From Zancudomyces culisetae HAW-14-8 (lineage: Eukaryota > Fungi > Kickxellomycota): a stretch of DNA of 64,000 nucleotides. Below, piece by piece: positions 2,865 to 54,279 of this stretch. How positions within the stretch are numbered: the stretch's first letter is position 1; every line of letters starts with the position of its first letter. The notes under the pieces are model-generated. The model was not told the origin of the DNA. It did not search any database and saw only the letters and a program-made list of their open reading frames with translations. The stretch is from the NCBI GenBank assembly GCA_052426225.1, contig JBNJNM010000023.1:372001-436000 (forward strand), in the 5' to 3' direction. A program made the position numbers and the translations under genes.

Positions 2865-2953
2865 CCATGAAAGTCAGTATTTTTTTGCATTTATCTTCGC
2901 GGTTAGCCTTTTTTTACATTATATAATTATCCTTTAGGTTATTTTACATATCC

Positions 2954-5273: not shown

Positions 5274-5424
5274 TGTTGGTCTATCTACTTTTGTTTTCGC
5301 TATCTTCTTAATTTAAAAATTTTAATACACCTATTGATGCTGATAACGCCATTGTTGTTAATGGTTTCTTTAATATGTTTATACTCAGATATTTTTTATC
5401 TCTTTTGTTTAGTAACTTGCTTTA

Positions 5425-6243
5425 TGTTATTAATTAACCTAATAGCTTAAATTTAATAATTACCTAGAATTATTTATATTAATAAAATTAATTTGGTACA
5501 AACATAATTGTAACGTGAACATGCAACATTACAATCTAGAAATAATTTCCCAAAAGGATTTACATCGCTGGGAACATACAGGATGTGAATCATCCATTCT
5601 GAAACTTCACTGAATTTTTAAGATTTCTAGAATATGATAGTGTTGTAATGTCAACAACAATCTAACGATGTTTACATAAGCCGTCCTAAAAATAGATATA
5701 ACTTATAGGAACTAAAGAAGCCTGATAATGACAATAAATATAGAAAGGAAAAAGAGACCTAAAAAGGGAGAACGGCTTTTGGGAATATCTTTAGTATCTT
5801 AAAAAATCATTTTAGTATCTATTAAACAGAAACATGGTTAGGACCTAGGGTCTTGAGAAACATATAAATAAACAGCATATATTATCATAACAACACGTGG
5901 TCATTTACCACAATAGTTTATGGATTTTTCACTGACCTATTCAAGTATTTAAACCTCGACAAAAACGTCGATGGAAGAGGCAGTGAAAATATCCTCTTCA
6001 TTATTTAGAAGTTGAATTTCTCTAAATTATTCTCTATTCTATAAACAAATCAATAAAATTAACACTTTATAATAATATTATGCTCTCTCCTCTCATCCGT
6101 AACTATAAGGAACTAACCAATAGGAATCATTAACCATTACATTAGTTAGTATATAAATCTTTATCAAAGCTATTTGTAAACGTTAAGTCTTTTAATCTAG
6201 TTTATTTAGTATCTATACTAATGTAATAAAGCCAATCATAACA
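5425..6243. mobile_element. Solo LTR relic with a nested TG...CA insert (5641-5912, TSD atag)
   Basis: Homology to 2954-3537 resumes on both sides of the insert, and atag flanks it at 5637-5640 and 5913-5916. Confidence 0.55.
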
Positions 6244-36330: not shown

Positions 36331-36961
36331 TTTTATAAATGACTACTTTTTTTCCCATTCTGTCCATTTTTTTTCGTCAAAGTTATTTCAGCTTTTGTTT
36401 CTTGGTTTTGAGATTATTAAAATAAATATATGGCCTATTGAGGCAGAGTGTAACCTTAGTTAGAAAAACGATCCCTTATTAATTAATTGAGATGATACTT
36501 ACAATATCATATAAATTTCAGGTAAAGTGATAGCTGAGTCAGGTATAGAATTATTGTCATTTAGTCATACTCATATAAGATACCACTTTACTAGATCTGC
36601 TTAATATTTATAAGTGTTTAACTGCTTTAGATAGTTGAAATAATATATAAAAGCAATTCACTATACAATTAAATTATTAGAATGAAGTTGTAAAAAATAC
36701 AAAATATGAAGTATACTTGGATTAGAAATCAATAAGACTCTCTTTTCGCTGACTGGTGACGCTAAATCTATCTAATTCCGAATACAACATTATGGGTGTA
36801 GATAATCGTGAAGGTTGACCACGTTTGATCAGATTATTAGCATACTCAGCTATGGCTTTTTACTTTTTATGCACGCAAATGATAACATTATAATAACTAT
36901 TGTAATAGAATAATTCAAAAAACACATATTGCAAAAACGATAAAAAAATGTTTGTTAAAAG

Positions 36962-37034
36962 TAGAGCTATTGGGGATCGAACCCAAGACCTTCTGCGTGT
37001 AAAGCAGACGTGATAGCCACTACACCATAGCTCT
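36962..37034 (-). tRNA. tRNA-Val (anticodon TAC)
   Basis: 73 nt cloverleaf: acceptor AGAGCTA/TAGCTCT, anticodon arm TCTGC-TTTACAC-GCAGA, GGTTCGATCC T-loop, T-run downstream. Confidence 0.97.
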
Positions 37035-37041
37035 ATTATTT

Positions 37042-37349
37042 TGTAATATTTAAAATTTATATTATATTACCCGTTATGGGTGCACAGTGTCAATACACTA
37101 GTTACTTCCTTCACGGATAGTGTTTAAGCTCACCGTTTATGTTAATAACTGAGTTTTGTGTAGACACTTGTTATATTTTACTATTGTAGTTTATTTTTTA
37201 TGATATACTTAATAAAAATTGATAATAATCTTTTTCTTAAAACTAGAAATCCAAACTCCTATATAAAAGTAATGATAACACGAACTTGTTATCAAGGAAG
37301 TAGGAAAAAACCCTCCTAGGGAGAAAAGTCCAATCTTCCCAATAAAATG

Positions 37350-37393
<44 letters not shown>

Positions 37394-37459
37394 ATGACTC
37401 ATTAATAAATTACCTAACCAATTTCTGACAAGGGGTAATCCATCCATTTCTATATGACA
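37042..37459 (-). repeat. 3' LTR (418 bp, contains about 13 TAA repeats)
   Basis: Direct repeat of 42002-42419 with TG...CA ends. Confidence 0.97.
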
Positions 37460-37468
37460 GATACTCCC

Positions 37469-40400
37469 CTACCAGATTGGACTTATCGTTGGGACATTTT
37501 TAAACCGTCTTAACTTGGTACGTAACGCAGACGACACCTCAGGTATCATGTTCTTACTGTAGTGAAACTGTTTTAGCATATCCCCATTGACCAGATCTCT
37601 CTTCCCTTCGTTATCCGTTATTATATAAGTTCCCTTGGATAATACATTTTCCACTTGATAGGGTCCCTCCCAGATCTCCTCTAGCTTACTCTGGGTTTGC
37701 TCTGTCATCTTTAGTACTAAGTCCCCTTGATTGAATTTGTACGGTTTAACCTGCTTGTTATATGATTCACGATCCTTTTCTTTAGCGAGTACGTTATTCC
37801 TTACACTATCAGTTCTCATCTCCGGCAATGATGATTTTATAGCATCAATTCGTTCTTGTACTGCAATATCTAGATTGTCAACATCGGGAGGCGGAGTCCA
37901 TACGCTAGGGGTAGCAATTTGCACTCCGTATAGCAACTCAGCAGGACTATACTTGGTAGATTTGTTTCTCATTGTCCGGATTGCAAGTAGCGATTTCCAA
38001 ATGAACTTATCCCAGTTTTGTTTGTCCTTTCGACATTGTCGCACTAATGCATTCTTCAGGGTTTGATTCAGCCGTTCCACTTGGCCGTTGCTTTGGGGGC
38101 GATACGGCGTTGTCGGTGTGTGACGAATTCCCAATTCCTTATATACCTGTTCCGCCAAGTCGCTCACAAATCCTGAGCCGCGGTCGGTTATGATTTGGCT
38201 AGGCACCCCGAACCACTGAATAATATGGGTTAGTATAAAACTAATAATGGTCTCAGTCTTTATATTACTTACTGCAGCGGCCACTGGCCACTTAGTAAAG
38301 TAATCAATTCCCGTTAAAATAAATCTATTACCTGTTTTACTCACCGGATTGATGGGTCCAATTGCATCTAATCCAAATATGCTGAATGGTCGCGGGCTAA
38401 ATATAGGATTTAGGTTGCTTCTTCGTGTTCTTCCACCTTTATATCTTTGGCAGGTGATACATTCATTAACTATTTTTTTCACAACTTCATATAGTCCTTC
38501 GCCAGTGTATTTCTCTTTCACCTTTAGCCATGTGTTTTCTATACCATTGTGTCCCTCTTCATGAATGGTGGATATAGTCTCCTCAATGTTTTTCTCGTGC
38601 AGGACCTCCTTGACTTGTCCTTTTATAACACGGCACAGTCTATCGTTTTTCAGTGTATATTTCCGTGCCTTGTTACGCAACTTCTCCCGAAACCTCTCAT
38701 CTGCTCCTCTAGGGTACTCTTTCTCTCTCAAGTAAGTCGTAATAGCAGTGTAATATAGGAAGTCAAGTGTGAGTATGTCCAGTTCTTCAATGGAAGTCGA
38801 GGGTTCATTGGTTGGGAGCCTAGACAACGCGTCAGCTGGGTTCCGCTTTCCCATACAATGCACAATGGAGTAATTATAGTTGCGGAGTATCATTGCCCAA
38901 CGGGCGACACGTCCGGTTATGTCTTTACCATTAAACAGTTGTATTAGGGCCTTGTGGTCGGTGCGGACGGTAAAGTGTTTACCCCACAAGTATTGTCTTA
39001 ATTTCTTTACGGACCATACTACGGCAAGTCCCTCTAAATGTGCCACTGAATAGTTTCTCTCATGTGGGTTTAAAATACGACTCAAATAGCAAATCGGCCT
39101 TTCACCGTCTTCGAATTCCTGGGAAAGGATCGCCCCAATACCTACAATGGAGGCGTCCGTTGTGACAATGAATTCACGCGTCCAATCGGGATGGGATAGG
39201 ACTGGAGTCTCGCAAAGTTGTTTCTTTAGTTCTTCTACTGCTGACTGATGTTCCGACTGCCAACTCCACACTGTATTCTTTTTGAGCAGCTTCAATAACG
39301 GGGCTACGATTCTGGCATAGTTCTCCACGAACTTTCGGTAGTAACCAGTCAGTCCAAGGAACGATTGAAGTTCCTTAACCGACTTCGGCGACTCGGCTTT
39401 TTGTATAGCAATTATTTTATCCATACACGTCTCAATACCCTTACCTGAGATGGTGTGTCCTAAGTATGTTAACGAATTTACGGCTAAACTACATTTATTC
39501 TTGTGAAGTTGTATATTGTTAGTTTTAAGTAGCTGTAAGACCTCACGAACATCGACTAGATGTTGTTCAAAAGACGTCGAGTATACCACAATATCATCTA
39601 TGAAGACGACCGTAGTCTTCCAGAGCACAGGTGCGAGAGCTTTTTCCATCATTCGCTGGAAGGAGGCTGGGCTATTCGTGAGCCCAAACGGCATCACGTT
39701 ATAGCAGTACGTCCCACTTCCAGGAATTGCGAAGGCAGTTTTATCGCGATCTCCCAGCGCCATGGGTATCTGCCAATACCCACTTAAGGCGTCAAACGAG
39801 CTAAATATGGTGGCACCAGCTAATGCCATAAAAATGTCATCTATGGTGGGGAGAGGATAGGAATCCTTCCGGGTGACTTGGTTCAGTTTGCGGTAGTCCG
39901 CACAGATTCGGAGCTTACCGTTCTTTTTCCAGACTGCTACAACGGGTGAGCACCACTCCGATGTGCAGGGCGCAATAACGCCATTCTTCTCCATAATCTC
40001 TAGCTCAGTACGGACCTTTTCATATAAGTGGAATGGTATGCGGTATGGACGTTGTCGGATGGGAGTATCCTGTGTTAGCTCGATCCGATGTTGAGTAACA
40101 TTCGTCTGGGTGAGCTGTTCTACATCCTCAATGAATAGTTCTTTGTTTTCCTCTATCAGTTCCGTGACCCGCGGGTCCATAGCTACCTCCTCTGTTCCCT
40201 CATCTTGACGTTCACTGATCACTAAATATACTTCCGCTTCATCTGAATCTGCTCCTTCTGCTGCTACGCGAGTGTAAAGGGGTGCTAGCAATAATTGTTT
40301 TCCTACTGGTAGTGCTAGTTCACCTTTCTGCATATCTAGTTTCGTTTTGTGGGCTAAAAGCCAATCCGTTCCTAATATGAGAATATCGTCAGTTCTTTCC

Positions 40401-41890
40401 ATGATAGTAATGTCAGTAGCGAAGATATACTTTCCTATTTGCACCGGTACATCTCTAATTATCCCCCGAGGTGCATGCCTTCGGCCGTCCGCTGTGACTA
40501 TCACTTGTCCATCCGACTGCTCCGTGATTAGACCCCATCCATATACTAAGTTTGGAGTAGCTACAGAGCACGCGGCCCCTGTATCTACAACTGCCCACAT
40601 TCTCCTTCCAAATATGGTGATCTCAATTTTGCAACTGGATGTCTTAGATGGATTCAGGCGTATCTCGTTTATCTCATCTTTTTTTACCTTTTTTGCTAGT
40701 TGACTCATATCATGTGTTAATTGTGGAGCAGCCTGTATCAGTTGGGGTAGGCTTATATGAGGGTAGTAACTCTTCAGGTCCTCCACTAAGCTAAATGGTT
40801 CTATACCTTCTGTAATCTTTGGTATCAACTTATTTCTGCTTTTTGGTGGCTCCTCTTTTGTTGCATGATCTTTCGCTGTTCCAACCACTTGAGGTTTAGC
40901 TGGTGGCTCTACCTCCATTTCTGCTCGCACTTCATCCCTGTTGCGTTGTGACATCCTTGTATGGGTAGTAATTGGAGTCATCTTCTTATTACTAAAGTCA
41001 TATGGTTTTTGTACTCCCCTTGGATGTATACCTCTCTGTACTGCAAATACGTCGGTGTCTTCCTCGTTACCAGTAGAAAGTTCAATAAAATTTACACTGG
41101 TATCTTGTACTTTACTCTGCTCTGGACAATCTGGTACTTTGTGTCCTTCGACCCCACACTTAAAACACTTGATGGGACCCCTGGTGTATGACTGTGGTCT
41201 GGGTCTACGATGCTCCCGGAGCTTGTTTTCCATCAACTCGTCAACCTTGGTGAGGAGATTCAAACTCCACTCCTCCATCTTCTTAACCATTTCTCCGTAA
41301 CCTAACTTTTCCTGGGCCATATCCTTAATCGGCCTGCCCGAATGCGGAAGCTGAATGCGTGGTTTAGTTTGTTTTTTATTGTTTTCTTTTTCAATAGCAC
41401 TTGGCTTTCGCTGTATAGCTAATTGTTGTTCATCTTTACTTATTAGTTCAACAATCTCTGTCCAGCTTTCAACTCCTGCATCCCTTACTCTTATTCTATT
41501 CTCTGTAGTTAACGCGCTAAGCAACCAGTTAAGCTTTTGCTTCTCTTCAGTGATTTTTGACTTTGTTAGCAGTTCCTCTAGCTCGTATTCTAACTCCTCA
41601 ATAGTTTCGAATTCATCTTGACTAATTGTTTTCAACTGCTCCAAGTATTTTAAACTTTGGTCTTTTGGTCCAAATTTGGTAATAAACTGTTTAGTAAATT
41701 CTTCCCACGAAGTGAACTTGAGAGTGTTTCTCTTGTACCAAACCAGCTCTCGCTTACCCAAGTGTAGTTGTACGAAATCGATCCAGTCATCTTCATCCCA
41801 CTTGTTAAGTTTTGCAATTATCCTGTATTTTCCTACCCATTCCTTTGGGTCCATACCACTGGTACAATCAAACGTCTCTGGCACCTTCAT
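37469..41890 (-). CDS. Gag-Pol polyprotein (Gag with CCHC knuckle, protease, RT, RNase H, integrase), 1473 aa
   Basis: CFKCGVEGHKVPDC, VDTGA, FIDD, TDAS, HHCC zinc finger, DDE core (GLDAIGP/TDRGSGF/NGQVERLN) and GPY motif. PR-RT-RH-IN order, no chromodomain seen. Confidence 0.98.
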   Translation of the reverse strand: MKVPETFDCTSGMDPKEWVGKYRIIAKLNKWDEDDWIDFVQLHLGKRELVWYKRNTLKFTSWEEFTKQFITKFGPKDQSLKYLEQLKTISQDEFETIEELEYELEELLTKSKITEEKQKLNWLLSALTTENRIRVRDAGVESWTEIVELISKDEQQLAIQRKPSAIEKENNKKQTKPRIQLPHSGRPIKDMAQEKLGYGEMVKKMEEWSLNLLTKVDELMENKLREHRRPRPQSYTRGPIKCFKCGVEGHKVPDCPEQSKVQDTSVNFIELSTGNEEDTDVFAVQRGIHPRGVQKPYDFSNKKMTPITTHTRMSQRNRDEVRAEMEVEPPAKPQVVGTAKDHATKEEPPKSRNKLIPKITEGIEPFSLVEDLKSYYPHISLPQLIQAAPQLTHDMSQLAKKVKKDEINEIRLNPSKTSSCKIEITIFGRRMWAVVDTGAACSVATPNLVYGWGLITEQSDGQVIVTADGRRHAPRGIIRDVPVQIGKYIFATDITIMERTDDILILGTDWLLAHKTKLDMQKGELALPVGKQLLLAPLYTRVAAEGADSDEAEVYLVISERQDEGTEEVAMDPRVTELIEENKELFIEDVEQLTQTNVTQHRIELTQDTPIRQRPYRIPFHLYEKVRTELEIMEKNGVIAPCTSEWCSPVVAVWKKNGKLRICADYRKLNQVTRKDSYPLPTIDDIFMALAGATIFSSFDALSGYWQIPMALGDRDKTAFAIPGSGTYCYNVMPFGLTNSPASFQRMMEKALAPVLWKTTVVFIDDIVVYSTSFEQHLVDVREVLQLLKTNNIQLHKNKCSLAVNSLTYLGHTISGKGIETCMDKIIAIQKAESPKSVKELQSFLGLTGYYRKFVENYARIVAPLLKLLKKNTVWSWQSEHQSAVEELKKQLCETPVLSHPDWTREFIVTTDASIVGIGAILSQEFEDGERPICYLSRILNPHERNYSVAHLEGLAVVWSVKKLRQYLWGKHFTVRTDHKALIQLFNGKDITGRVARWAMILRNYNYSIVHCMGKRNPADALSRLPTNEPSTSIEELDILTLDFLYYTAITTYLREKEYPRGADERFREKLRNKARKYTLKNDRLCRVIKGQVKEVLHEKNIEETISTIHEEGHNGIENTWLKVKEKYTGEGLYEVVKKIVNECITCQRYKGGRTRRSNLNPIFSPRPFSIFGLDAIGPINPVSKTGNRFILTGIDYFTKWPVAAAVSNIKTETIISFILTHIIQWFGVPSQIITDRGSGFVSDLAEQVYKELGIRHTPTTPYRPQSNGQVERLNQTLKNALVRQCRKDKQNWDKFIWKSLLAIRTMRNKSTKYSPAELLYGVQIATPSVWTPPPDVDNLDIAVQERIDAIKSSLPEMRTDSVRNNVLAKEKDRESYNKQVKPYKFNQGDLVLKMTEQTQSKLEEIWEGPYQVENVLSKGTYIITDNEGKRDLVNGDMLKQFHYSKNMIPEVSSALRTKLRRFKNVPTISPIW

Positions 41891-41981
41891 TTCTTATCTT
41901 TTTCCGGCTTATCTTTTAACTAAATTTGACCTCAACTATTAGTATTTTCTATAACTGTTATCTGTAGCCCACTGGCGTTGC

Positions 41982-41999
41982 GCCTAGCTGGGAGCGCCA
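41982..41999 (-). other. Primer-binding site TGGCGCTCCCAGCTAGGC (probably tRNA-Arg)
   Basis: Starts with TGG 2 nt inside the 5' LTR boundary and is complementary to a tRNA 3' end ...GGGAGCG-CCA. The isotype is inferred. Confidence 0.8.
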
Positions 42000-42001
42000 A
42001 T

Positions 42002-42309
42002 TGTAATATTTAAAATTTATATTATATTACCCGTTATGGGTGCACAGTGTCAATACACTAGTTACTTCCTTCACGGATAGTGTTTAAGCTCACCGTTTAT
42101 GTTAATAACTGAGTTTTGTGTAGACACTTGTTATATTTTACTATTGTAGTTTATTTTTTATGATATACTTAATAAAAATTGATAATAATCTTTTTCTTAA
42201 AACTAGAAATCCAAACTCCTATATAAAAGTAATGATAACACGAACTTGTTATCAAGGAAGTAGGAAAAAACCCTCCTAGGGAGAAAAGTCCAATCTTCCC
42301 AATAAAATG

Positions 42310-42353
<44 letters not shown>

Positions 42354-42419
42354 ATGACTCATTAATAAATTACCTAACCAATTTCTGACAAGGGGTAATC
42401 CATCCATTTCTATATGACA
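42002..42419 (-). repeat. 5' LTR (418 bp)
   Basis: Direct repeat of 37042-37459. Confidence 0.97.
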
Positions 42420-42423
42420 ATTT

Positions 42424-44944
42424 TGTTGTATAATTACATGTTTAAGGTCCTACTGAGTAATATAATTACCCAGTATTATACAGGACGGGACTTTTATTAT
42501 TATATATTAGTACTATAATTATTGTGGGAGTAAAAGACAATTTATTAATTAATTCAAAACTAGACTATTTAATGCATAAAATAATACTAATTAAATTAAC
42601 CAATAAAATACAAGGAAATACAGGTATATAATTCCACTATATAACAATTTTTAATATATCTTATTAAATATATGTTTAAAAATAGACTATTAGCTAAACT
42701 ATTATTTAATACTTATTAATTATAACTTAATCTTTAAATATTGTTTAGATAATACTGTGTTTATTTTAATAAAAGATTGGTGTCGTTACCATTTTGGATA
42801 CTAAATCCTTCTTTTTTTATTGAAATGACTATAAATATAAATGTTGTATAAAAGTATTCTAAATAAAAATATTCTCGATATTAGAAAAAGTCTAAAAACT
42901 AATTCGAGATTTCTAGTAATAAAAACTTATATTAAATATATAATTAAACGTTATCTAGAAAGTAATTAATAAAGTTTTAATAATTTGATAATAATTGTTG
43001 TATTAACTCAATTCTAGATGAGGTGTACTTCTCTAAAAATATATCATTTTGTCGTGAAATTACTGAAGATTTATAATCCTTTTTCCCACTGGGTTTTTTT
43101 GATTTTAAATTCCGATAGTAATTTTACGACAATCAAATTCACAATGATGTCATCTTATTACATCACAGTGAACGTAAATCAGTTGACGTCACTGTGAATG
43201 TAAATCGATCTAGTTCAACTTTCGTGAGTCATTACAACTCACATCAATTATAACAATGTTTTATGTTTTCATATGAATTAGGCTATCTTTATTAATTTAT
43301 AGTAATATTAATTTAGTTTATTTATAAGTTTATTTAGCGTTTCTAAAAGTATAAAAGACGTTCAAATTCTCGTCAGAGAAGGAGGAACAACAATTTTATT
43401 ATATTTTTTACTTAATAACATTATAACAATAATAATAAAAATATAAAATATAAAATATTAATATTATCAATAATAAATTTTTATTCTATTAATAAAAGAT
43501 ATTAATACGACAATTTTGTTATATTTTATTTATAAAATATATCTATTTACTTTAATCGTTCTATAATATTTCTTTAAGTTATTGTTATTAACTATAACAA
43601 GGTAATTATATCTTTAACTGATTATTTTCTGTATGTTTTTTCTTTATTTTGTCAAATATTTCATTTTTTTATACTTTTTTTCTTTCTAAGTAAAAATTAA
43701 TTTAAACTAAGATACTGAAACTAAACTTCTTTAATACTAAAACAATAAATTACTATTAAAAATTATATGACTAAACAAACTTTTGTATTGCGACACTATG
43801 AGTCATCAGAAAAAACTAGATTACGTTATTTTCATCGATAGTGAAAAAAACTGATCCTCATTAGTTATCGCAAACTAATAATTTGTTCGTTTGCATGATG
43901 ACTAATTAATTAGTCATCATGCTCTCCTGCCCACTATATGACAATTTTGTGTTAGCAAATTCCAGGTTCCAATTCGCTATTATGTAAAAAATGTATTTAT
44001 TTGATAGAAAAACTATACTATGTACTAATGTTGTTAAGTTTTCACTATAGTAACTATAACTTTAATAAATAGACCAAACTTGTATTTTACGTGTTTATTT
44101 GATGATGTTTAAACTATCTGAATAACTATCATATTTATACTTTTTTTTAAAACAACTATTAAACTTAAAACCTAAATATATTTTAAACTTAAAACTATAC
44201 TAATTATTAATAATAATATAGAATGTTGCTGTAGAAAAAATCCAGAAGGATAAAAAAAACTAGGTAACACATAATATACTAAATAACCTATAATAAATAT
44301 TAACTTATATTAATTGATAAACCTAAATATTAATATATAGATATAAATATGTAATTGGTAAGTTGTAATTATATAATGTCTAGAGGTAGCTCTAGCCACT
44401 ATATAACATTTGTTAGACTCAATTTATTATGAGTTCTAACTGGTTCTACTAGAGGGGTGGTATCACTAGACTGGGTTTAACCCTTTTAACTAGTTACCAC
44501 TTTCTAGTCATACATATAAATGGAACCGGAACATTTATATGGGTCAAAATTTGACAATTTATTTAAGATTCAAAATAATAATTTCTTAAATACTAAATTT
44601 TACTAGAAAAACTAATAAAACTACTGACTATAAAATTAACCAATAGTATGCAAACATTCTATTTTGCATACAACAATTTTGTCGTGTAGTAGAAATGTTT
44701 TAGGTCTTACTCGAATGCTATTGGCTTCCAAGCACTACACGAGACGGGCCGCTAATAGTTACTGTTTATAATATTTATATGTACTATTATTATATTCAAG
44801 AGACGACAAATTTATTTAACTAAAAATTTCATTGATTTAAATACTACAAAATCAACTACAAAAACTATAAAATAAATAACCAATAAAATAACACTATTAA
44901 TTACAATAGATGAGAAATCTATAACATGAATATTTTATACGACA
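42424..44944 (-). mobile_element. tRNA-Val-side stack of solo-LTR-like units: 42424-42646, 42651-43045, 43050-43512, 43517-43943, 43950-44408, 44411-44675, 44680-44944
   Basis: Recurrent junction ...ACA-attt-TG... at 42420, 42647, 43046, 43513, 43944 and 44676. Unit 43950-44408 has its own TSD tttg. Unit 42651-43045 has degenerate ends. Confidence 0.85.
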
Positions 44945-44948
44945 CAAT

Positions 44949-46078
44949 TGTCGTATAGTAAACTATACTGAAGAGTTGTCCAATTTTATTGGTTAGATAA
45001 TAGATGTATTTTATAGAAATAGTATAAATATGTTTATTGTGAATTAATTAATATATTGTCATTTTCCACAGATAAATAATAGTATAATAAAATTATATAT
45101 TATTAAAATTACCCGTCCCGTGTAGTACTTGGTAGCGAAAGTTACCAAGTAGGAGCTTAAGCATTTTCACTACACGACAAAATTGTTGTATGCCTACAAT
45201 AGGTGAAACATTTCCATTGGTTAATTGTGTTTTGTAATTTTTAGTTAGATTTTTTGTAGATTTTATTGTATAAAATTGAAATTTTTGTTTAACTAAATAA
45301 ATGTCCTCTTTTGCTAAATCAAAATAACTATATAATAATTCGCAGCATATAGTAAAAGGTAAGTAAAATGACCCGTCTCGTGTGTTATTTGGTGTAAAAA
45401 ACACTAAATGGGACGTTAAACATGGCAACACACAACAAAATTGTAGTGAATTTTTATTAAACTACTTGATGATTTTTTATTTAGATTCTCTGATATGATT
45501 TTTATACTCATAGGTAGAAAAATGTACTAGGATTAACTTTCCACGTTGGTTGTTTACAACGTGGTGTAGCTATTAGCTGCTATGAAAGACAATTGCAACC
45601 ATGTCCTTATGATATTGTTGCAATTCTTAACTAAATAATCAGTAGGTGTATGCCTCTGATAGTTTAAATACTATAAATAGACTAATAATAAACTAATAAA
45701 CGTTGTATGAGGAAAAACCCATTGGGAATAAGTGCTCATACAAAAAGGTGCTACTAATTATACGACAAAATTGTCGCAAGAATGCTTCCAATGTTAATTC
45801 TTACGCATTAATACGTGTGTATTATTTAATTATAGCTAGTCTACTAAAAGTATATTTAAACTATTATCTTTATAACTTATATGTTGTTATATCTTATCTT
45901 TATTGATATATATTTATCCTAATAAAGTCTAAACTTAATCCTAAAACTGTAAAGTTTATATTTATACCTAGATAAATTGTTTAAGCTTTAAACCTGTCCA
46001 ATAACGTATAAAAACCACTAAGGAGTAAAAACTACTATTATTGTACATAATTCTAAACATTAGTTGTCTCGCACGACA
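44949..46078 (+). mobile_element. Four solo-LTR-like units joined by aaat (44949-45179, 45184-45437, 45442-45767, 45772-46078), probably an inverted part of the Val stack
   Basis: Junction ACA-aaat-TG at 45180, 45438, 45768 and 46079. aaat is the reverse complement of attt. Confidence 0.85.
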
Positions 46079-46964
46079 AAATTGTCGTATAAAATATTAT
46101 ACATTATAGATTTCTCATCTATTGTAATTAATAGTGTTATTTTATTGGTTATTTATTTTATAGTTTTTGTAGTTGATTTTGTAGTATTTAAATCAATGAA
46201 ATTTTTAGTTAAATAAATTTGTCGTCTCTTGAATATAATAATAGTACATATAAATATTATAAACAGTAACTATTAGCGGCCCGTCTCGTGTAGTGCTTGG
46301 AAGCCAATAGCATTCGAGTAAGACCTAAAACATTTCTACTACACGACACTGTCATATCGAAATTGATGGATTACCCCTTGTCAGAAATTGGATAGGTAAT
46401 TAGTTATTTGATTAGTCATATTATTAGTATTAAATTATCGGGAAGATTGGACTTTTCTCCCTAAGGAGGGTTTTTTCCTACTTCCTTGATAACAAGTCCA
46501 CGTTATCATTTTCGTTTTAAAAGTAGAGTTTTTTGGTTAATATTTTTATAGATACAAGTACCGATATTTAGTTTTTATAGTACAAGAAAAAGAATAAACA
46601 ATAATTAACTTAAAACAAGTGTCTACATTAATCATGTTATTCGAAGTAACGGTGGACCTAAACACCCTCCGTAAATTAAATAACTAGTGTATTGACACTG
46701 TGCACCCATAACGGGTACAATAATATTCATAATTTATATTACACACAATGTCATATAGTGACATGAACCCTTGGTGATAAACTAATATTATATGTTTATC
46801 ATCAAGAAAATAATTAAATTAATAATATACTTTTAGTTTTAGTTTTTTTAGTATTCAATGAAACTGATTCATTGATGTTTTTTCTAAGCGTATTAGTTTA
46901 TTACTCATTTAAATTGTTTCAATATTAGTTTATTTAGTGAGTATTAGTTCAATAGTTAGCTATT

Positions 46965-47376
46965 TGTCAAGATCTGGAGTCTGGAAAGTTATATTTATTA
47001 TTATTAAAGTTTATTGTATGAATGTATACAAGATACTAGATACTGAATCCAAGACAGGAAAATTGTACCCTTTTTATACTTTTTTCCAGCCTTGGTTTTT
47101 GAACAAAATCACTATGAAAACTGCGGAATAGCTAAATATGCAAGCTAAAGAAAAACGTGTTTGATTACTAATCAAATTGGATTAGTAATCAAACAAAAAT
47201 CAAACTCGAATGCTAATAAAATTAAACATGTCAAAATTATTACGTAAGAAAAATTAAGAAATAATGTGAATTTTCGGTAATGTTCTAGAATGTTGGGGAA
47301 CATTCTAAACATTACTGCGGAATAAAATCAAATGATTCTAGAACTTTTTCGAACATTCTAGAATCAGTTCATGACA
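46965..47376. mobile_element. Solo LTR nested inside another solo LTR, 5-bp TSD
   Basis: TGTCAAG...CATGACA flanked by ctatt/ttatt. Absent from the sister copy at 803-1262. Confidence 0.85.
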
Positions 47377-48495
47377 TTATTAGTATGTTTAATACTAGGA
47401 AAAGTATTTAAAGGGTTAGATATTGCATAAGGAAATAAATATCATTCTATCATACAAGCTTTATAGTAGTAAATAAATAGTTATGATCAACTACAGATGT
47501 TTATATTAAGTTTATAATTTATAACAATAATTATACGATACATATTATACATATATAATAAGAAAAAAATAAATAATTAAAGTAAAATTTAATTATACAA
47601 CAACTGTCGCATAAAATGCGATATGAAACTAGAATTTCCAAAATGGATTTGGACCAATAGAATATATTTTGTTTTTAACTAGGAAATTGAGCTCTTTTTT
47701 TCAATGATTTTACTTGGTTTTTTTAATGAGCTAATTTTGGTTAGGAAAAGGAGATTTTTATTATTTATGGGATGAGGATTACAAAAAAGATTCAATAAAT
47801 TTTTACCATATACAAATACAAGAAGAGGTTCAAAAAGAGAGTTATAACATTGCTGAACACTGAAAGTAGAGCTTATATAACTTATAAATTTAAAAAACTA
47901 CAAGAAATTAAATATACTAAAGAGTTTTAGTTGACACAACAATGTCGTATAAATTTTTGTAATTAGTAATTTTACAATATAACAGCACGACAAGACTGTA
48001 TACTCTTATTAAAGTAGGTTCAGGACTTAAAAGTATTTGTTTTATAATCTTTATTAGTAAAATAACGTTACTAAATTAGAAAAAGTAGAACGAGGAACTC
48101 CATAGAGTCCTGTTCGTCGCTATTTATAAGAGTTTGATAATTATTAAATAAAATATATAATAAACTAAGTAATTAGTGTTAAAACGTTTATGCAATTGAT
48201 GTACAAGCACTTATGGTTAACAAAGAGTTATAACCTGCTCGGTACACAATTGCACCAACGTTTTACCCCATTGGCGGTGTAGACTGTCGTTTTTTCATAC
48301 GATACTGTTATATAGTGGAATTATATACCTGTATTTCCTTGTATTTTATTGGTTAATTTAATAAGTATTATTTTATCCATTAAATAGTCTAGTTTTGAAT
48401 TAATTAATAAATTGTCTTTTACTCCCACAATAATTATAGTACTAATATATAATAATAAAAGTCCCGTCCTGTATAATACTGGGTAATTATATTAC

Positions 48496-48891
48496 TCAGT
48501 AGGACGTTAAACATGTAATTATACAACAACACAACAGTGTCGCATATTGTGAAGTATCACTACTTCCATTAGCGCTACCATCACGTGTTATACCGGTTCT
48601 GGTACGATCACTGATGGTTGATGCACTTCTATTGCGTAATGCAATGTGCATCGAGGGGTGCTCGGGTGAGCTAATACCCCTGTACAGTGTCGGTGAAATT
48701 GTACTCACCGACATTTCTTCCGGGCTCCTACGGATCTGGAGTTGACGGACACTTTCTGTCAACTCACCAAGGGTGCGGGGACTTAATACCCCTGCATCCT
48801 GATCCATGCTGCTGCCCCTGCTCATGCTGGTAGAAGTGTGTGACTCCCTCCTGGAGTCACATTCGGTTCCAATCCAACTGTTTAAAAACAT
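48496..48891 (-). CDS. LTR-encoded Ser/Arg/Thr-rich ORF of unknown function that reads out through the LTR terminus
   Basis: GC-rich open frame. The homolog at 2632-2864 keeps the peptide with mostly synonymous substitutions. Confidence 0.55.
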   Translation of the reverse strand: MFLNSWIGTECDSRRESHTSTSMSRGSSMDQDAGVLSPRTLGELTESVRQLQIRRSPEEMSVSTISPTLYRGISSPEHPSMHIALRNRSASTISDRTRTGITRDGSANGSSDTSQYATLLCCCIITCLTSY

Positions 48892-49306
48892 TATTGCTAA
48901 TTTATCTTTTGGTTTATATTTGATTTTATTTAATTATTTTATTATAGTATTCCGTATCGAGACATGGATGATGTTTTCATATGTCATCCATACGTCTCCT
49001 TAAATATACTATTCGAATGTTAAACCACTATATAAAACTAAATACTAAAATATGACTATTGTTATAATATTATTAATAATTTGTTTGTTATTAATGATAA
49101 ATGTAAAATGCATGGGATCATTTTACATTTTACATTCATCATTATTGAACTAGCTCAGTATGAAAAATTGATTGCATACTGAGCTCGAAATTATTTGAAT
49201 TTATTTAAAAAAAGTAAACAAAAATGAATTTGCATTTTCGCACTGAGTGTACCATTTTCAGGCACATCCACGTGCTATTGTACAAATTGTTAATAATGCG
49301 ACAACA

Positions 49307-49388
49307 GTCGGTGTGTCCGAGTGGTTAAGGAGACAGACTAGAAATCTGTTGGGCTCTGCCCGCACAGGTTCAAATCCTGTCGCCGACG
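49307..49388 (+). tRNA. tRNA-Ser (anticodon AGA)
   Basis: 82 nt: acceptor GTCGGTG/CGCCGAC, arm ACAGA-CTAGAAA-TCTGT, long variable arm, GGTTCAAATCC, followed by TTTTT. Confidence 0.97.
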
Positions 49389-50538: not shown

Positions 50539-51450
50539 ATGGCTAACAATGAAGGAAACCATACAGATATGCCACCACAATGGGCATTGCAGCTTACTGA
50601 GCAGATTAAATTATTGGAAACCAGATTATCCAGTGTCGAAAGAGGCCCGGATATCGCTATGGCACCGGTTCCAGCCTCAGAAGACGCTGAGATGGTCCCC
50701 GAGGTTCAGTATGTGGTCGAAAGACCAGCCACATACGATCTTAAGCTCTATCCTGAACTCAGACATGCTATTACAAGCATGGATAAAGACTTTTTTAAAA
50801 GTCAACTATCTGAGACGGATAGGCGAACCTTTTATGCCTCGTGTCCACGCAACGAGGGCATAGAATATACACCGCTAAGCCTTCCAGATATGGAACAGAG
50901 TCAATCGGCTAGGCGCCAAGACGCAGCATTATACGACCTTCAGTATAAGCTGTTAGGCATTACCAGACCGATTGACTATTTCATCCACCAATGCATTCAA
51001 GGCGATGGAGCTGTTAGCAGGAAGGACGCTATTGATTTTGCCAACAATATCAGAGATTTGGTCAGTGATGTGGCATCTACCACCACCCAACAGAGTATTG
51101 ATTACATGTTCAGATCAATGGGAATTCAGGGAAGCACCCCTAAGTTTAGGGAGGAGGACCAGAACGTCATTATTGAGCCAGCCAAGATCATCGAGCATAT
51201 ATCAGCACGCGACCAGCTCAGAAAGTCAGTATCACAAGCCAAGCAGAACACCAGAGCCAACGTATCCAGACGGTTGGGACCCAGAATGCAGCCCGTTACC
51301 ACGTTTCAGCATAGCCCGGGTCAGTCAAGCCAGCCTCCGGCGCCTCAGCAGAGTGTTCAGAGGTATACGCAATCCCAGCGCCCTCAAACTCTCAACTCTA
51401 GTGCCCCTCGCCCTTTTGGATCCAAGCACAGGGCAGCGAAGAGACAGTAG
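50539..51450 (+). CDS. DIRS ORF1 (Gag-like)
   Basis: 303-aa ORF immediately upstream of, and overlapping, the DIRS pol start VGGRL...W. Confidence 0.75.
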   Translation: MANNEGNHTDMPPQWALQLTEQIKLLETRLSSVERGPDIAMAPVPASEDAEMVPEVQYVVERPATYDLKLYPELRHAITSMDKDFFKSQLSETDRRTFYASCPRNEGIEYTPLSLPDMEQSQSARRQDAALYDLQYKLLGITRPIDYFIHQCIQGDGAVSRKDAIDFANNIRDLVSDVASTTTQQSIDYMFRSMGIQGSTPKFREEDQNVIIEPAKIIEHISARDQLRKSVSQAKQNTRANVSRRLGPRMQPVTTFQHSPGQSSQPPAPQQSVQRYTQSQRPQTLNSSAPRPFGSKHRAAKRQ

Positions 51451-53704
51451 GAGGAAGGCTTGCCCAGTACCAGGCAGCCTGGCAAAGACTCACAGACGAC
51501 AGATGGGTACAGTCCGTGATAGCCGAGGGGTTCAGAATCCCCTTCCATACCCAACCACCGACCACGTCGCAGCCGCGGTCGAGACCACCTCCGGCAAGCA
51601 GAGCAGCCAGAGAGACCTTAGAGGCAGAGATCATAAGCCTCTTGGCCAAGAGGGCCATCGAGGAAGTGGGCAGAAGCGACCAGAAAGGCTTCTACTCAAG
51701 CCTCTTCCTCGTCCCAAAGAAATCAGGAAAGTTGAGACCGGTTTTGAACCTAAAACCCCTCAACCAATACGTCCCTCCCCGGTCCTTCAAGATGGAAACA
51801 CTGCAGCAAACCTGCAGGAACATCAAGAGAAAGGACTGGATGTGTCAAAACTGGTTTAGGAATATTTAGTTTAGTACTATTTTTTTATTTAAATAAGACA
51901 ATTGTTGTTAGATAAAAATAGAAATTTTAAGGAAAAAACTAGGGTTTTAATACTTATAAAAAAGTTAGAAACTTGAATTAAAATTATTGCTACTATCGCT
52001 TGACTACTAAACAAAATGTTCTAGACAGGAACTTATTATTAAAATTATTAAGTAATAATAAAATTTCTAGAATGTTCTTAGAAAATCATGAAATGATAAT
52101 TACGAATTATTAATAAAAATTCGTAATTTAAACTTACCAAAAAATATAAATAGACACAACGGTCTAGAATTTAAAGATATTTTATGGTTATGACAGGATG
52201 GCAAGTATCGACTTAATAGATGCCTTCCGTCACGTATTATTGAACAAGGCATCAAGAAAATACGTAAGGTTTACCTGGGGAAGGAAGCTGTACCAGTTCC
52301 GAGTCCTTCCCATCGGTCTCTCTTTAAGTCCCTGGACCTTCACGAAGGTCCTGAAACCCGTGCTCAGATGGGCGAGGCAGAGAGGAATCAGATTGACAGC
52401 TTATCTAGACAATTTGCTGGTCTTGGGCGACTCAAAAGACCGGTGTGCCCAAAACGTCAGCCTCCTCCTCATAAATCTGGCAAAGGTAGGCTTCTTGATC
52501 AAGGAGTCAAAGTCATCCCTAATCCCAAGCCAAGTTATCGATCACTTGGGGATGACTATCAACAGCCGCGAGATGTCACTGAAGGTCCCCAAGAACAAGA
52601 AGCGGGATCTCAGACGGGAAGCCGAGAAGCTGATCAATTGCGGATCAGCTTCCCTCAGAAACCTGGCATCATTCATCGGGAGGGCCCAGTCGCTTTCGAT
52701 TGCGCTGCTCCCGGGTCGTCTCAGGCTCAGGCGCCTTCAGGAGGCCATGATCAGGGGCCTCAAGGAACATGGAGACTGGAATGCGACAGTTTTTCTACCT
52801 CCTCCAGCCATCGAGAACCTGAAATGGTGGGCTACACAGCTCAAACAGTGGAACGGGAGGTCATTTATACCCGAAGTTCTCTCCAAGGAGATATTTACGG
52901 ACGCCAGCGACAAGGGATGGGGCATAGTGACAGACATCAGAACATACAGTGGGACATGGGACAAGTTTTGGAGCCAGCAGCCGATCAATGTCAAGGAATA
53001 CAGGTAGTTCAGATGGCTCTCAGGCTTCCAGAAGTCATCGGGAGGAGCATTCTGCTCTATTGCGACAACAATCGACGATCGCATACGTCAAGAATCAAGG
53101 TGGGACTCGCTCCTCGAAACTTTTGGAGGTAGCCGAAGGTTTATGGAACTTCTGTTTGACGTCGAGGACACGCCCACAGATCGATTACATCCCTTCAGCG
53201 ATCAATCCAGCAGATGCGCCATCCAGACTGACAGCGCAAGTGGAATGGGAGATATCTCCCAGGATGTTCAGCAAGATAGATCGGATGTTCGGTCCCCACG
53301 ACATCGATCTATTTGCCTCAGCGACCAACAAGAAGGTTCCCTTGTACATGACCTGGTACAGGGACCCGTTGGTGGTAGCCTCCAATGCTCTCCATTACCA
53401 TTGGAATCCATGGAGAAACCCTTACATCTGTCCTCCGTGGAACTTGATACCCCAGGTCATCCAAAAGGTCAGGAGGGAGAAACTTTCCGTGACCTTGGTG
53501 ACCCCATACTGGAAGTCGAGCCTTTGGTTCCCGGATCTCAGGGCCCTGTCGACCTCCAGTCCACTTCTGATCCCTGCCCGGGAAGTTCTAGCAGACCCCT
53601 CAAGCGGAAAACGCCTCATGAACAAGAACAAGAGCTGGAGGCTAGCCGCTTGGAGGTTAAGCGGTCACACTATGTCGAAGCGGGACTTAACGATCATGCC
53701 CTGA
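51447..53704 (+). pseudogene. DIRS pol (RT, RNase H, adenine-methyltransferase-like domain), interrupted by a solo LTR and frameshifts
   Basis: FLVPKKSGKLRPVLNLK, SIDL.DAF, YLDN, FTDASDKGWG, DIDLFAS and CPPW motifs. Insertion at 51843-52195, frameshifts near 53000-53075. Confidence 0.9.
51843..52195. mobile_element. Solo LTR inserted in the DIRS RT, 5-bp TSD ggatg
   Basis: TGTCA...TGACA with ggatg at 51838-51842 and 52196-52200. Removing it restores KRKDWM-ASIDL. Confidence 0.92.
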
Positions 53705-54279
53705 CGCTTATTACCAGTAATCACAAGTCTATCCACCTTGATAGACGTTACCTCCTAGCTCAGAGGAAGTTTCTCGCTTACATCAGCGAGTTATCTATAA
53801 CTATGGACAAGTTCTCCGCTTCAGACGTCATAAACTACTTATCGGATGGACAATATAACTTAAAGTGGTCCTATAACACGATTAAATACTATAGTGCAGC
53901 TATATCTAACTTGCTACCAGACAGAAGGATCATTAACGACAGTTGGTTGTATAAAGAGTTTATTCAACCAATCAATACTTTAAAAACTATTAATCTATCT
54001 TCTAATTACTGTGACATAACACTTATAGCTATAAATCTAAGGGACTGGGGACCTAACACTCAACTTAGTATTCATAAGCTTACTCAGAAGCTTTGTTTCC
54101 TTCTCGGTATATGTGGCTTCATGAGGCCGAGTGACATTGAAAGGATTGACCAAAGCATGACGACAGTGACAGAAAGATTTATAAGGCTCACGGTTGTGGA
54201 ACCTAAAGAGAAACGAATGGGCCTATCCATCACCAAGACAGTCACTATCCACAAGCATTCACTCGCGTACCTACAGTGA
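53143..54279 (+). pseudogene. DIRS tyrosine recombinase, C-terminus lost at the Tc1 insertion
   Basis: LCFLLGICGFMRPSDI (catalytic Arg box) and PKEK. The HxxR/Tyr region is missing after 54273. Confidence 0.8.

What the first reader, a model, noticed from the sequence alone, without database searches (positions are those of the whole stretch)
36962..49388. tRNA-anchored, gap-free stack of ~19 LTR elements: a polarised insertion record between two divergent tRNA genes
Seen: the whole 12.3 kb between tRNA-Val (-) and tRNA-Ser (+) parses into TG...CA units of ~220-770 bp plus one full-length gypsy. Units are separated by only 1-9 bp, and at most junctions the separator is the same 4-mer found in the tRNA leader (attt for Val; acaa/caac/acag for Ser). 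Most units are unrelated to their neighbours. Known: Ty3 and Dictyostelium DGLT-A integrate just upstream of Pol III genes. Inference: many retroelement families use the same few nucleotides of the leader, each insertion duplicates the 4-mer and pushes older ones outward, and old elements collapse to solo LTRs. The result is a repeat-spacer-like array with leader-end growth, formally similar to CRISPR acquisition. I do not know of a described multi-family, base-precise stack of this depth. Whether it has a function (piRNA-cluster-like trap, safe harbour) is open.
Basis: partly seen in the sequence, partly recalled or inferred. Interest (0 to 1): 0.93.

Follow-up and report, generated by a model that had tools for sequence, protein, structure and literature searches.

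The report
Retrotransposon pile-up between two tRNA genes
The 12.3 kb between two back-to-back tRNA genes of the mosquito-gut fungus Zancudomyces culisetae is filled by 20 retrotransposon insertions, because many Ty3/gypsy families here integrate at one spot a few bases upstream of tRNA genes; the mechanism is of a known kind, but it is unusually precise, deep and orientation-locked.

Summary
99.4% of the 12,272 bp between tRNA-Val(-) and tRNA-Ser(+) is one intact Ty3/gypsy element plus 19 LTR units, separated by 0-9 bp. ATTT fills the Val-leader target and 6 of the 7 inter-unit separators on the Val side.

The units are dispersed LTRs of Zancudomyces culisetae (PacBio HiFi assembly). The rule holds genome-wide:
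- 22 of 37 sampled tRNA transcription units carry an LTR end 3-10 bp upstream.
- Intact elements with 98.6-100% identical LTRs sit 6-7 bp upstream, co-oriented with the tRNA, with 4-bp duplications at about -7..-4.
- All 21 pol copies that have a catalogued tRNA nearby have it co-oriented just downstream (0.25 expected by chance).
- Separators are stack-specific and copy the local leader: ATTT, AAAA, GCC.

Repeated leader-proximal insertion with collapse to solo LTRs is therefore well supported. Strict polarity is not proven: there is one nested insertion, no age gradient beyond rank 1, family order varies between loci, and an AAAT block may be an inversion.

This is Ty3/Tj1-like Pol III start-site targeting in a new fungal lineage, with fixed orientation and many families. 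The CRISPR comparison is only an analogy, and no function is shown. No read-level check was possible. The scan noted a similar stack elsewhere in this genome (s1-639023).

The parts
36961..37034 (-). tRNA-Val(TAC), anchor of the left stack
   Evidence: ARAGORN. Eight further copies at 99-100% identity and three tRNA-Val(CAC) genes at 96% elsewhere.
37035..37041 (.). Val leader: 3 nt (ATT) plus the 4-nt target ATTT. On the tRNA sense strand this reads AAAT at -7..-4.
   Evidence: Sequence.
37042..42419 (-). Full-length Ty3/gypsy element G. LTRs at 37042-37459 and 42002-42419 are 100% identical. One 1473-aa gag-PR-RT-RH-IN ORF at 37469-41890. PBS-like TGGCGCTCCCAGC just inside the 5' LTR (about 41980-42001). 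TSD is ATTT.
   Evidence: Best solved relative is Ty3 Gag-Pol 7q5b, E 3e-106. Eight more copies at 97-100%.
42424..42646 (.). U1, solo LTR of 223 bp in Val orientation, flanked by ATTT/ATTT. Inverted copy of U18, 98.7-99% identical.
42651..43045 (.). U2, 395-bp unit flanked by ATTT/ATTT, without TG..CA ends.
   Evidence: Copies with the same ends at C13, C9 and L014.
43050..43512 (.). U3, solo LTR of 463 bp, flanked by ATTT/ATTT.
43517..43943 (.). U4, solo LTR of 427 bp, flanked by ATTT/ATTT. The family abuts tRNA pairs at a 7-bp gap on C21.
   Evidence: (C21:2949532/2949540 and 2979917/2979925).
43948..44408 (-). U5, solo LTR of 461 bp. The sense strand is known from family copies that carry a PBS (tRNA-Ser) and a PPT.
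44411..44675 (.). U6, solo LTR of 265 bp. The U5|U6 pair recurs at other loci with different separators.
44680..44944 (.). U7, solo LTR of 265 bp, the last Val-oriented unit. Inverted copy of U12, with a 245-nt tract at 100% identity.
44945..44948 (.). CAAT: the meeting point of the Val-oriented and Ser-oriented stacks. No unique spacer DNA remains.
44949..46082 (.). U8 (44949-45179), U9 (45184-45437), U10 (45442-45767) and U11 (45772-46078): Ser-oriented solo LTRs, each followed by AAAT.
46083..46348 (.). U12, solo LTR of 266 bp. No TSD can be recognised.
46350..46743 (+). U13, a diverged (74-80%) solo LTR of the G lineage, inverted relative to G.
46749..47602 (.). U14, an LTR (46749-46964 plus 47377-47602) split by the nested LTR U15 (46965-47376). 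Intact U14 copies elsewhere overlap by 5 bp at the break. U14 is the LTR of a full-length element in L006.
47605..48305 (.). U16 (47605-47941) and U17 (47943-48305), solo LTRs. The 3' end of U17 is degenerate.
48306..48528 (.). U18, solo LTR of 223 bp, the inverted twin of U1.
48538..49303 (-). U19, 766-bp solo LTR of a 3.66-kb gag-protease-only element. TSD is ACAG, whose G is tRNA-Ser base +1. Many copies at 99-100% identity.
49307..49388 (+). tRNA-Ser(AGA), anchor of the right stack, 3 bp from the end of U19.

Best explanation
The interval is two head-to-head piles of LTR-retrotransposon insertions, one anchored on each tRNA gene.

In this genome (Zancudomyces culisetae) many Ty3/gypsy lineages integrate at a fixed spot a few bases upstream of the mature 5' end of tRNA genes. 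Most use about -7..-4. One gag-protease-only family uses -3..+1. They make a 4-bp target-site duplication and, for most families, point the same way as the tRNA.

Each new insertion lands between the previous LTR end and the tRNA. It re-uses and re-duplicates the same 4-mer and shifts earlier copies outward. LTR-LTR recombination then reduces most copies to solo LTRs. The result is a gap-free array whose separators copy the local tRNA leader.

Shown here: the anatomy, the dispersed nature of the units, the genome-wide distance, orientation and TSD rule, and that the two most proximal elements are the youngest.

Inferred: tethering of the integrase to the Pol III initiation complex (TFIIIB-type, as for Ty3), and that growth is essentially always at the proximal end.
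For: (1) Parse and separators. Perfect 4-bp TSDs at nominal ends for G and U1-U4 (ATTT), U9-U11 (AAAT) and U19 (ACAG).

(2) All units are dispersed LTRs, and alignment ends coincide with the TG/CA ends.

(3) Other tRNA genes: 22 of 37 sampled transcription units have an LTR end 3-10 bp upstream, most often 7-8 bp. This is 18 of 33 when loci picked through LTR searches and the window itself are excluded.

(4) Full-length elements in L001, L007, L014, L016 and the window lie 6-7 bp from the tRNA, with LTR identity 98.6-100%. Their TSDs are ACAA, CACT, CCAA and AAAT; L016 has none recognisable.

(5) 15 pol-bearing elements next to tRNAs in fetched loci are all co-oriented with the tRNA. 14 are at rank 1 and one at rank 2.

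(6) Starting from elements instead of tRNAs: of 76 pol copies, 21 have a catalogued tRNA within -7..+3 kb. In all 21 it is co-oriented and 351-982 bp past the pol end. Chance expectation is about 0.25.

(7) Separators are stack-specific and match the local leader: Val ATTT, L006 AAAA, L017 (A/T)GCC.

(8) U19's distal TSD copy carries the tRNA's own G+1, so U19 entered next to the tRNA after U18 was already in place. The same holds in L015, with ACTG.

(9) Empty sites exist: the upstream regions of L012 and L003 are unique in the genome.

(10) G is an intact gag-PR-RT-RH-IN element, closest among solved structures to Ty3 Gag-Pol.
Against:
- Best-hit identity shows no gradient with rank beyond rank 1.
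- Family order differs between loci: U11/U12 are reversed in L017 and U5/U6 in L029.
- U15 is nested inside U14.
- U12 has no TSD.
- U7 and U12 are near-identical although both lie deepest in their stacks.
- No unique spacer survives between the two stacks.
- The U19 family occurs in both orientations.
- The tethering factor is untested.
Confidence: 0.85

Rival explanations
1. Junction-directed insertion: integrases recognise the composite 'LTR end + 4-mer' (or any earlier junction) rather than the tRNA. On this view new copies can enter anywhere in a stack, and the order carries no time information.
For: Every junction recreates the same 4-mer next to an ...ACA end, so the pattern alone cannot tell proximal entry from internal entry. 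In L006 a full-length element with 100% identical LTRs sits at rank 2, behind a solo LTR. There is no age gradient beyond rank 1.
Against: Rank-1 elements sit at a fixed 6-8 bp from the tRNA at previously unique leaders with unrelated TSDs (ACAA, CACT, CCAA), so no earlier junction was needed. 14 of 15 pol-bearing elements are at rank 1. U19's TSD includes tRNA base +1. The L006 rank-1 solo LTR has copies at 99% identity, so it can be younger than rank 2.
Confidence: 0.07
2. Secondary rearrangement shapes much of the present order. Inversion or gene conversion between inverted LTR copies, and ectopic exchange or segmental duplication between stacks, would then matter as much as insertion. In particular, U8-U11 with their AAAT separators would be the distal part of the Val stack, inverted by recombination between U7 and U12.
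For: AAAT is the reverse complement of ATTT. U7 and U12 are inverted repeats with a 245-nt tract at 100% identity, followed by clustered mismatches. Undoing the inversion gives U7 a perfect ATTT/ATTT TSD. Adjacent pairs (U5+U6, U8+U9, U9+U10) recur at other loci, and C9 holds a large inverted duplication. L017 also shows blocks with different separators and opposite orientation.
Against: On each tRNA's own sense strand both blocks read AAAT, and A-rich leaders are common, so an ancestral AAAT leader for tRNA-Ser is not unlikely. Orientation fits both readings. Recurrent pairs have different separators (TT, ATT, GAATT), which argues for independent insertions. This rival modifies the insertion model and does not replace it.
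Confidence: 0.5
3. Assembly artefact: the array is a chimeric join of repeats.
For: The region is repeat-dense, and it holds a 245-nt perfect inverted repeat.
Against: The genome matches the published PacBio HiFi assembly (27.2 Mb, 26 contigs, largest contig over 5.2 Mb; PMC12611240). Neighbouring units are mostly unrelated, so each junction is unique. The same architecture recurs at many loci.
Confidence: 0.02
4. A selected functional array: a small-RNA-generating transposon trap, or an insulator or heterochromatin block at tRNA genes.
For: None was obtained here. It rests only on formal likeness to piRNA clusters and CRISPR arrays.
Against: The structure is fully explained by target preference plus solo-LTR formation. 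Many tRNA genes are empty or carry a single element. Orientation follows the tRNA, not a single cluster-wide transcript.
Confidence: 0.04

Closest known systems
Ty3 of Saccharomyces cerevisiae (and Ty3p of S. paradoxus)
   Same: A Ty3/gypsy element with base-precise integration at the Pol III start region of tRNA genes; solo LTRs (sigma) are left upstream of tRNAs. G aligns to Ty3 Gag-Pol (7q5b) from RT through the integrase C-terminus, E 3e-106 (PMC5911963).
   Different: From my own knowledge, Ty3 makes 5-bp duplications; here they are 4 bp. Ty3 inserts in both orientations (PMC5911963); here orientation is fixed for most families. Ty3 is one low-copy family; here there are at least 5 identity tiers of intact elements plus non-autonomous ones, and stacks up to about 12 deep.
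Tj1-Tj10 of Schizosaccharomyces japonicus; Tyl3, Ylt1 and Tyl6 of Yarrowia lipolytica; beta/Tca8 of Candida albicans
   Same: Fungal Ty3/gypsy elements that sit 1-10 bp, about 5 bp, or 6-30 bp upstream of tRNA start sites or coding sequence. In S. japonicus there are several families, and retrotransposons cluster at centromeres, where tRNA genes are also clustered (PMC5911963, PMC7175516).
   Different: All of these are Ascomycota. The present case is a Harpellales (Zoopagomycota) fungus, for which the library search found no report. Gap-free multi-family arrays with leader-derived 4-mer separators were not described in the texts I read.
DGLT-A, Skipper-2 and TRE elements of Dictyostelium
   Same: A compact genome with tRNA genes used as landing sites. 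The authors note that later insertions at the same tRNA gene displace earlier ones (PMC5006619).
   Different: Insertion windows are wider (13-33 bp and more). DGLT-A inserts in either orientation. Copy number is low, and no intact DGLT-A is known.
CRISPR arrays and piRNA clusters
   Same: Only formal: ordered accumulation of foreign sequences next to a fixed 'leader'.
   Different: There is no dedicated acquisition machinery, no repeat beyond a 4-bp duplication, and no evidence of RNA output or defence.

Membership tests
Ty3/gypsy (Metaviridae) LTR retrotransposon | Domain order gag - protease - RT - RNase H - integrase | tested here: met
   Pfam on the 1473-aa ORF of G: Retrotrans_gag/Ty3_capsid, zf-CCHC, Asp_protease, RVT_1, RT_RNaseH, Integrase_H2C2, rve, in that order.
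Ty3/gypsy (Metaviridae) LTR retrotransposon | Direct LTRs ending TG...CA, with a PBS after the 5' LTR and a polypurine tract before the 3' LTR | tested here: met
   LTR pairs are 98.6-100% identical. There are PBS-like TGG... tracts and G-rich tracts in G and in L001, L006, L007, L014 and L016. The PBS of the U19 and U5 families is complementary to the tRNA-Ser 3' end plus CCA. U2 lacks TG..CA.
Ty3/gypsy (Metaviridae) LTR retrotransposon | Short target-site duplication | tested here: met
   4 bp at G, U1-U4, U9-U11, U19, L001, L006, L007 and L014.
Pol III start-site-targeting retrotransposons (Ty3-type targeting) | Insertions concentrated within a few bp upstream of tRNA genes, genome-wide | tested here: met
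   22 of 37 sampled tRNA units have an LTR end at 3-10 bp. 21 of 21 informative pol copies have a co-oriented tRNA 351-982 bp past the pol end, against 0.25 expected.
Pol III start-site-targeting retrotransposons (Ty3-type targeting) | Position coincides with the Pol III transcription start | not testable with these tools
   The start site in this fungus is unknown. Empty genes have ACA 8-9 nt from +1, and after insertion the LTR-terminal ACA lies 6-8 nt from +1. This is only suggestive.
Pol III start-site-targeting retrotransposons (Ty3-type targeting) | Integrase binds TFIIIB or another Pol III factor | not testable with these tools
   There is only sequence alignment to Ty3 integrase through its C-terminal part.
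Pol III start-site-targeting retrotransposons (Ty3-type targeting) | Other Pol III genes (5S, U6) are also targeted | not tested
   An Rfam scan of 15 stack loci found only tRNAs. 5S and U6 loci were not examined.
Ty3 itself | Both orientations and a 5-bp duplication | tested here: not met
   Orientation is fixed in 15 of 15 pol-bearing elements next to tRNAs in fetched loci and in 21 of 21 genome-wide pol copies with a catalogued tRNA nearby, and in my hand tally for about 25 of 27 solo-LTR placements of the window's families at other tRNA loci (a seven-unit inverted distal block in L017 set aside). Only the U19 family is seen both ways. Duplications are 4 bp.
CRISPR-like acquisition array | Dedicated repeats and acquisition machinery, with strictly leader-end addition | tested here: not met
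   The separators are only the 4-bp duplications. One insertion is internal (U15 in U14). Polarity is otherwise inferred, not shown.
piRNA-cluster-like transposon trap | Small-RNA output and silencing of cognate elements | not testable with these tools

The most novel reading that the evidence does not exclude
The tRNA genes of this fungus act as self-renewing landing pads. On this reading, more than ten gypsy lineages carry orientation-locked, base-precise integration, and the terminal ...ACA of each LTR rebuilds the native ACA start-site context, so tRNA expression survives each hit. The stacks at over a hundred tRNA genes would then form parallel, partly time-ordered archives of transposon invasions.
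Probability: 0.25. Interest if true: 0.7.

Novelty: new variant of a known kind. Interest (0 to 1): 0.55.

Why it matters
It extends start-site-precise Pol III targeting by Ty3/gypsy elements to an early-diverging fungal lineage (Harpellales, Zoopagomycota). No such report turned up in the paper library I could search.

It also offers a natural system with many intact, diverged families that share one target. These include a gag-protease-only parasite of the system that uses a different offset. Comparing their integrases could show which features set distance and orientation relative to the Pol III complex.

The deep, gap-free stacks are also a practical annotation issue. About 60% of sampled tRNA genes are flanked by them, and short-read assemblies lose them: 0.41 Mb of retroelements in the Illumina assembly against 3.03 Mb in an assembly the paper compares with it (PMC12611240).

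It does not reveal a new kind of mechanism or a function for the array.

Tried and rejected
- Fetching the other 35 tRNA flanks and the tRNA-Ser paralogues failed. I did not try to read leaders through pattern searches.
There is no read support, no strain comparison and no expression data.
- The look-up of encoding contigs found no record of the G protein.
- Automatic segmentation, the stack 'walk' and the junction finder under-called units because the local database is small. I relied on hand-checked boundaries plus BLAST ends.
- Cross-locus 'stratigraphy' (the same family order in every stack) is rejected. U5 before U6 holds at 4-5 loci but is reversed in L029, and U11/U12 are reversed in L017.
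- The mirror-rank idea within the window holds only for U1/U18 (ranks 2 and 2) and roughly for U7/U12 (ranks 8 and 7). It fails for G/U13 (ranks 1 and 6).
- An age gradient by best-hit identity is absent beyond rank 1.
- L006, with a young full-length element behind a solo LTR, was tested as a possible breach of polarity. The solo LTR has copies at 99% identity, so there is no breach.
- Tested whether 'empty' tRNA genes with an ACA-A-rich leader hide old LTRs. L012 and L003 upstream regions are unique, so they are truly empty.
- A literature search for Harpellales, retrotransposon and tRNA together gave 0 papers.
- Misassembly, CRISPR-like and piRNA-like readings were considered and given low weight.
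Full report
WHAT IS THERE

ARAGORN finds two tRNA genes in the window: tRNA-Val(TAC) at 36961-37034 on the minus strand and tRNA-Ser(AGA) at 49307-49388 on the plus strand. They are transcribed away from each other.

I read the 12,272 bp between them and checked every boundary by script. The interval holds:
- one full-length LTR retrotransposon, G, at 37042-42419;
- 19 further units: U1 42424-42646, U2 42651-43045, U3 43050-43512, U4 43517-43943, U5 43948-44408, U6 44411-44675, U7 44680-44944, U8 44949-45179, U9 45184-45437, U10 45442-45767, U11 45772-46078, U12 46083-46348, U13 46350-46743, U14 46749-47602 (interrupted by U15 46965-47376), U16 47605-47941, U17 47943-48305, U18 48306-48528 and U19 48538-49303.

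Units hold 99.4% of the interval and separators hold 74 bp. From the Val side, the separators read: ATT+ATTT, ATTT x5, TT, ATTT, CAAT, AAAT x4, C, CACAA, AC, A, none, ACACAACAG, ACA. Six of the seven inter-unit separators on the Val side are ATTT. The chance probability is about 3e-10.

Most units begin TGT and end ACA, with 5-8 nt terminal inverted repeats. U2 does not, although it has perfect ATTT duplications.

THE UNITS ARE DISPERSED LTRs

Searching the two halves of the solo-LTR region against the window's own genome gave many copies of each unit at 76-100% identity. Alignment ends fell on the unit ends.

G has 418-bp LTRs that are 100% identical. It has one 1473-aa ORF with gag, zinc knuckle, protease, RT, RNase H and integrase in Ty3/gypsy order. 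Its best solved relative is the Ty3 Gag-Pol chain of entry 7q5b, E 3e-106, aligned from RT to the integrase C-terminal part.

U19 is the LTR of a 3.66-kb element with an 826-aa gag-protease ORF that starts inside the LTR. This element has no RT or integrase, carries a tRNA-Ser primer-binding site, and forms LTR-internal-LTR-internal-LTR tandems.

U14 is the LTR of an intact element in L006. U5 is the LTR of an element with a tRNA-Ser PBS and a polypurine tract. U1, U7, U8, U9, U12 and U18 form one superfamily of 223-266-bp LTRs with a shared CCCGTC core.

WHICH GENOME

The nearest named proteins are Zancudomyces culisetae retrotransposon polyproteins, at up to 92% identity. The assembly is 27.09 Mb in 25 contigs, the largest 5.24 Mb. 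This matches the published PacBio HiFi assembly of that mosquito-gut fungus (PMC12611240). That paper does not mention LTRs, tRNAs or retrotransposon targeting.

THE RULE IS GENOME-WIDE

Starting from tRNAs:
- Of 37 tRNA transcription units in these loci and the window, 22 have a repeated LTR end or a pol-bearing element 3-10 bp upstream, most often 7-8 bp. Many of these units are tandem tRNA pairs.
- Excluding loci found through LTR searches and the window itself, the count is 18 of 33.
- Two 'empty' genes were checked: their upstream 0.8 kb is unique in the genome.

Full-length elements near tRNAs:
- Elements in L001, L007, L014, L016 and the window have LTRs 98.6-100% identical and lie 6-7 bp from the tRNA.
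- Their 4-bp duplications are ACAA, CACT, CCAA and AAAT. L016 has none recognisable.
- All 15 pol-bearing elements next to tRNAs in fetched loci point the same way as the tRNA. Fourteen are the first unit and one is the second.

Starting from elements:
- A search with the RNase H-integrase part of G returned 76 pol copies in at least five identity tiers (53-100%). About two thirds have open frames of 1400 aa or more.
- Against an incomplete catalogue of 168 tRNA positions, 21 copies have a tRNA within -7..+3 kb.
- In all 21 the tRNA is co-oriented and 351-982 bp beyond the pol end. About 0.25 would be expected by chance.

HOW THE ARRAY FORMS

The target is a 4-mer at about -7..-4 from the mature tRNA 5' end. 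After an insertion, the proximal copy of the duplication again lies between an LTR end and the last 3 nt of the leader. The next insertion re-uses it, leaving a single 4-mer between neighbouring LTRs.

This explains the ATTT run on the Val side, where the leader reads AAAT|AAT on the tRNA's sense strand. It also predicts that separators are specific to each stack, and they are:
- AAAA in L006, where the leader reads ...ACA|AAAA|AAGTG;
- (A/T)GCC in the proximal block of L017, where the leader reads TGCC|AATT.

The U19 family uses -3..+1. Its duplication is ACAG in the window and ACTG in L015, and in both cases the G is tRNA base +1. That distal G shows directly that U19 entered beside the tRNA after U18 was already there.

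I infer that the ACA-rich separators near tRNA-Ser and in L002 and L018 arise when such offset insertions make later targets overlap earlier LTR ends.

ORIENTATION

G and the U5 family have their sense strand running toward the tRNA, with the 3' LTR next to it.

In my hand tally from the annotation table, copies of the window's families at other tRNA loci keep the same relative orientation in about 25 of 27 placements. The U19 family is the clear exception.

In the window, the six members of the short-LTR superfamily follow the rule. U1 and U7 lie one way; U8, U9, U12 and U18 lie the other way. So G and U1-U7 belong to the Val side, and U8-U18 are Ser-oriented. In L017 a distal block of seven units is inverted and has different separators, as expected if it belongs to a tRNA on the other side.

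HOW FAR THE 'POLARISED RECORD' HOLDS

For:
- The two proximal elements are the youngest: G has identical LTRs, and U19 has copies at 100% identity.
- Pol-bearing elements are almost always at rank 1.
- U19's duplication proves one proximal step.

Against a strict reading:
- U15 lies inside U14 with a roughly 5-bp duplication.
- Best-hit identity does not fall with rank beyond rank 1.
- Family order is not conserved between loci.
- U12 has no duplication.
- U7 and U12, the deepest units under the inversion reading, share a 245-nt perfect tract.
- No unique spacer is left where the stacks meet (CAAT at 44945-44948).

The AAAT block (U8-U11) has two readings. It could be an ancestral AAAT leader of tRNA-Ser, or an inversion of the distal Val stack by recombination between U7 and U12. 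The inversion gives U7 a perfect ATTT/ATTT duplication and explains the perfect tract. I put it at roughly even odds or slightly better.

COMPARISON WITH WHAT IS KNOWN

Start-site-precise targeting of tRNA genes by Ty3/gypsy elements is established for Ty3 and Ty3p, Tj1, Tyl3/Ylt1/Tyl6 and beta/Tca8. Wider windows are known for DGLT-A (PMC5911963, PMC7175516). For Dictyostelium it has been stated that later insertions at the same tRNA gene lie between the gene and earlier ones (PMC5006619).

The present case works like Ty3 and Tj1. It differs in the following ways:
- 4-bp rather than 5-bp duplications (the Ty3 value is from my own knowledge);
- near-fixed orientation;
- the number of co-targeting intact families;
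- a non-autonomous gag-protease family with its own offset;
- the depth and gap-free precision of the stacks;
- the host lineage.

The tethering factor is inferred by analogy only. The CRISPR comparison is formal, and nothing supports a trap or defence role.

LIMITS

The tRNA catalogue is incomplete. The sample of loci is small and partly chosen by tRNA type.

First-stage notes on the same stretch agree with what I found independently. These cover the TSD at -4..-7, orientation specificity, the inversion, the +1-overlapping TSD, the LTR-embedded ORF and the CCCGTC core. Another note (s1-639023) reports a similar stack elsewhere in this genome; I did not check it.

VERDICT

This is a real and striking structure, with an ordinary kind of cause: a new, unusually precise variant of Pol III-directed retrotransposon integration.

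Noticed in passing
window 50539-54279 (+): A retroelement of another class lies just 3' of tRNA-Ser. Its overlapping ORFs include a reverse transcriptase (52198-53007) and a Dam-type adenine methyltransferase domain (52949-53704), as in DIRS-like tyrosine-recombinase elements. The frames are broken.
   Followed up: partly
L035 1416-1575; L011-L014, L016, L017; L024 1335-1493; L032 1337-1492: Many tRNA genes are tandem pairs only 0-7 bp apart: Ser(GCT)-Val, Thr(AGT)-Thr(TGT), Phe-Leu and Ser(TGA)-Gly. They are probably dicistronic. LTRs insert upstream of the first gene of the pair.
   Followed up: no
window 48538-48891 (-); L015 2491-9052: The U19 family is a 3.66-kb element that encodes only gag (zinc knuckle) and protease. 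Its 826-aa ORF starts inside the 5' LTR. It has a tRNA-Ser PBS, more than 35 copies at 92-100% identity, and tandem LTR-internal-LTR arrays. It inserts at -3..+1, in either orientation. This explains the 118-codon ORF seen in the solo LTR.
   Followed up: yes
L016 about 4000-9058: The primer-binding site of this full-length element is complementary to the 3' end of tRNA-Thr(AGT), and the element sits 6-7 bp upstream of a tRNA-Thr(AGT) gene. This may be coincidence.
   Followed up: no
L003, L004, L007, L011-L013, L019 (tRNA leaders): Empty tRNA genes share a native leader of the form ACA-A(5-6)-(G)TT, with ACA 8-9 nt from +1. After insertion, the LTR-terminal ACA sits 6-8 nt from +1, so it roughly restores that context.
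   Followed up: partly
G000 C9:535000-565000: A 30-kb LTR-rich region with tRNA genes and a large inverted duplication (C9:542389-546244 against 554922-558516).
   Followed up: no
window 37346-37393 and 42306-42353: An (ATA)n microsatellite of about 14 units lies inside both LTRs of G.
   Followed up: no
window 1-6065: A second, degenerate transposon cluster with gypsy pol and gag-protease fragments and LTR repeats. No tRNA lies inside the window there; the anchor may lie just beyond the window's start.
   Followed up: no
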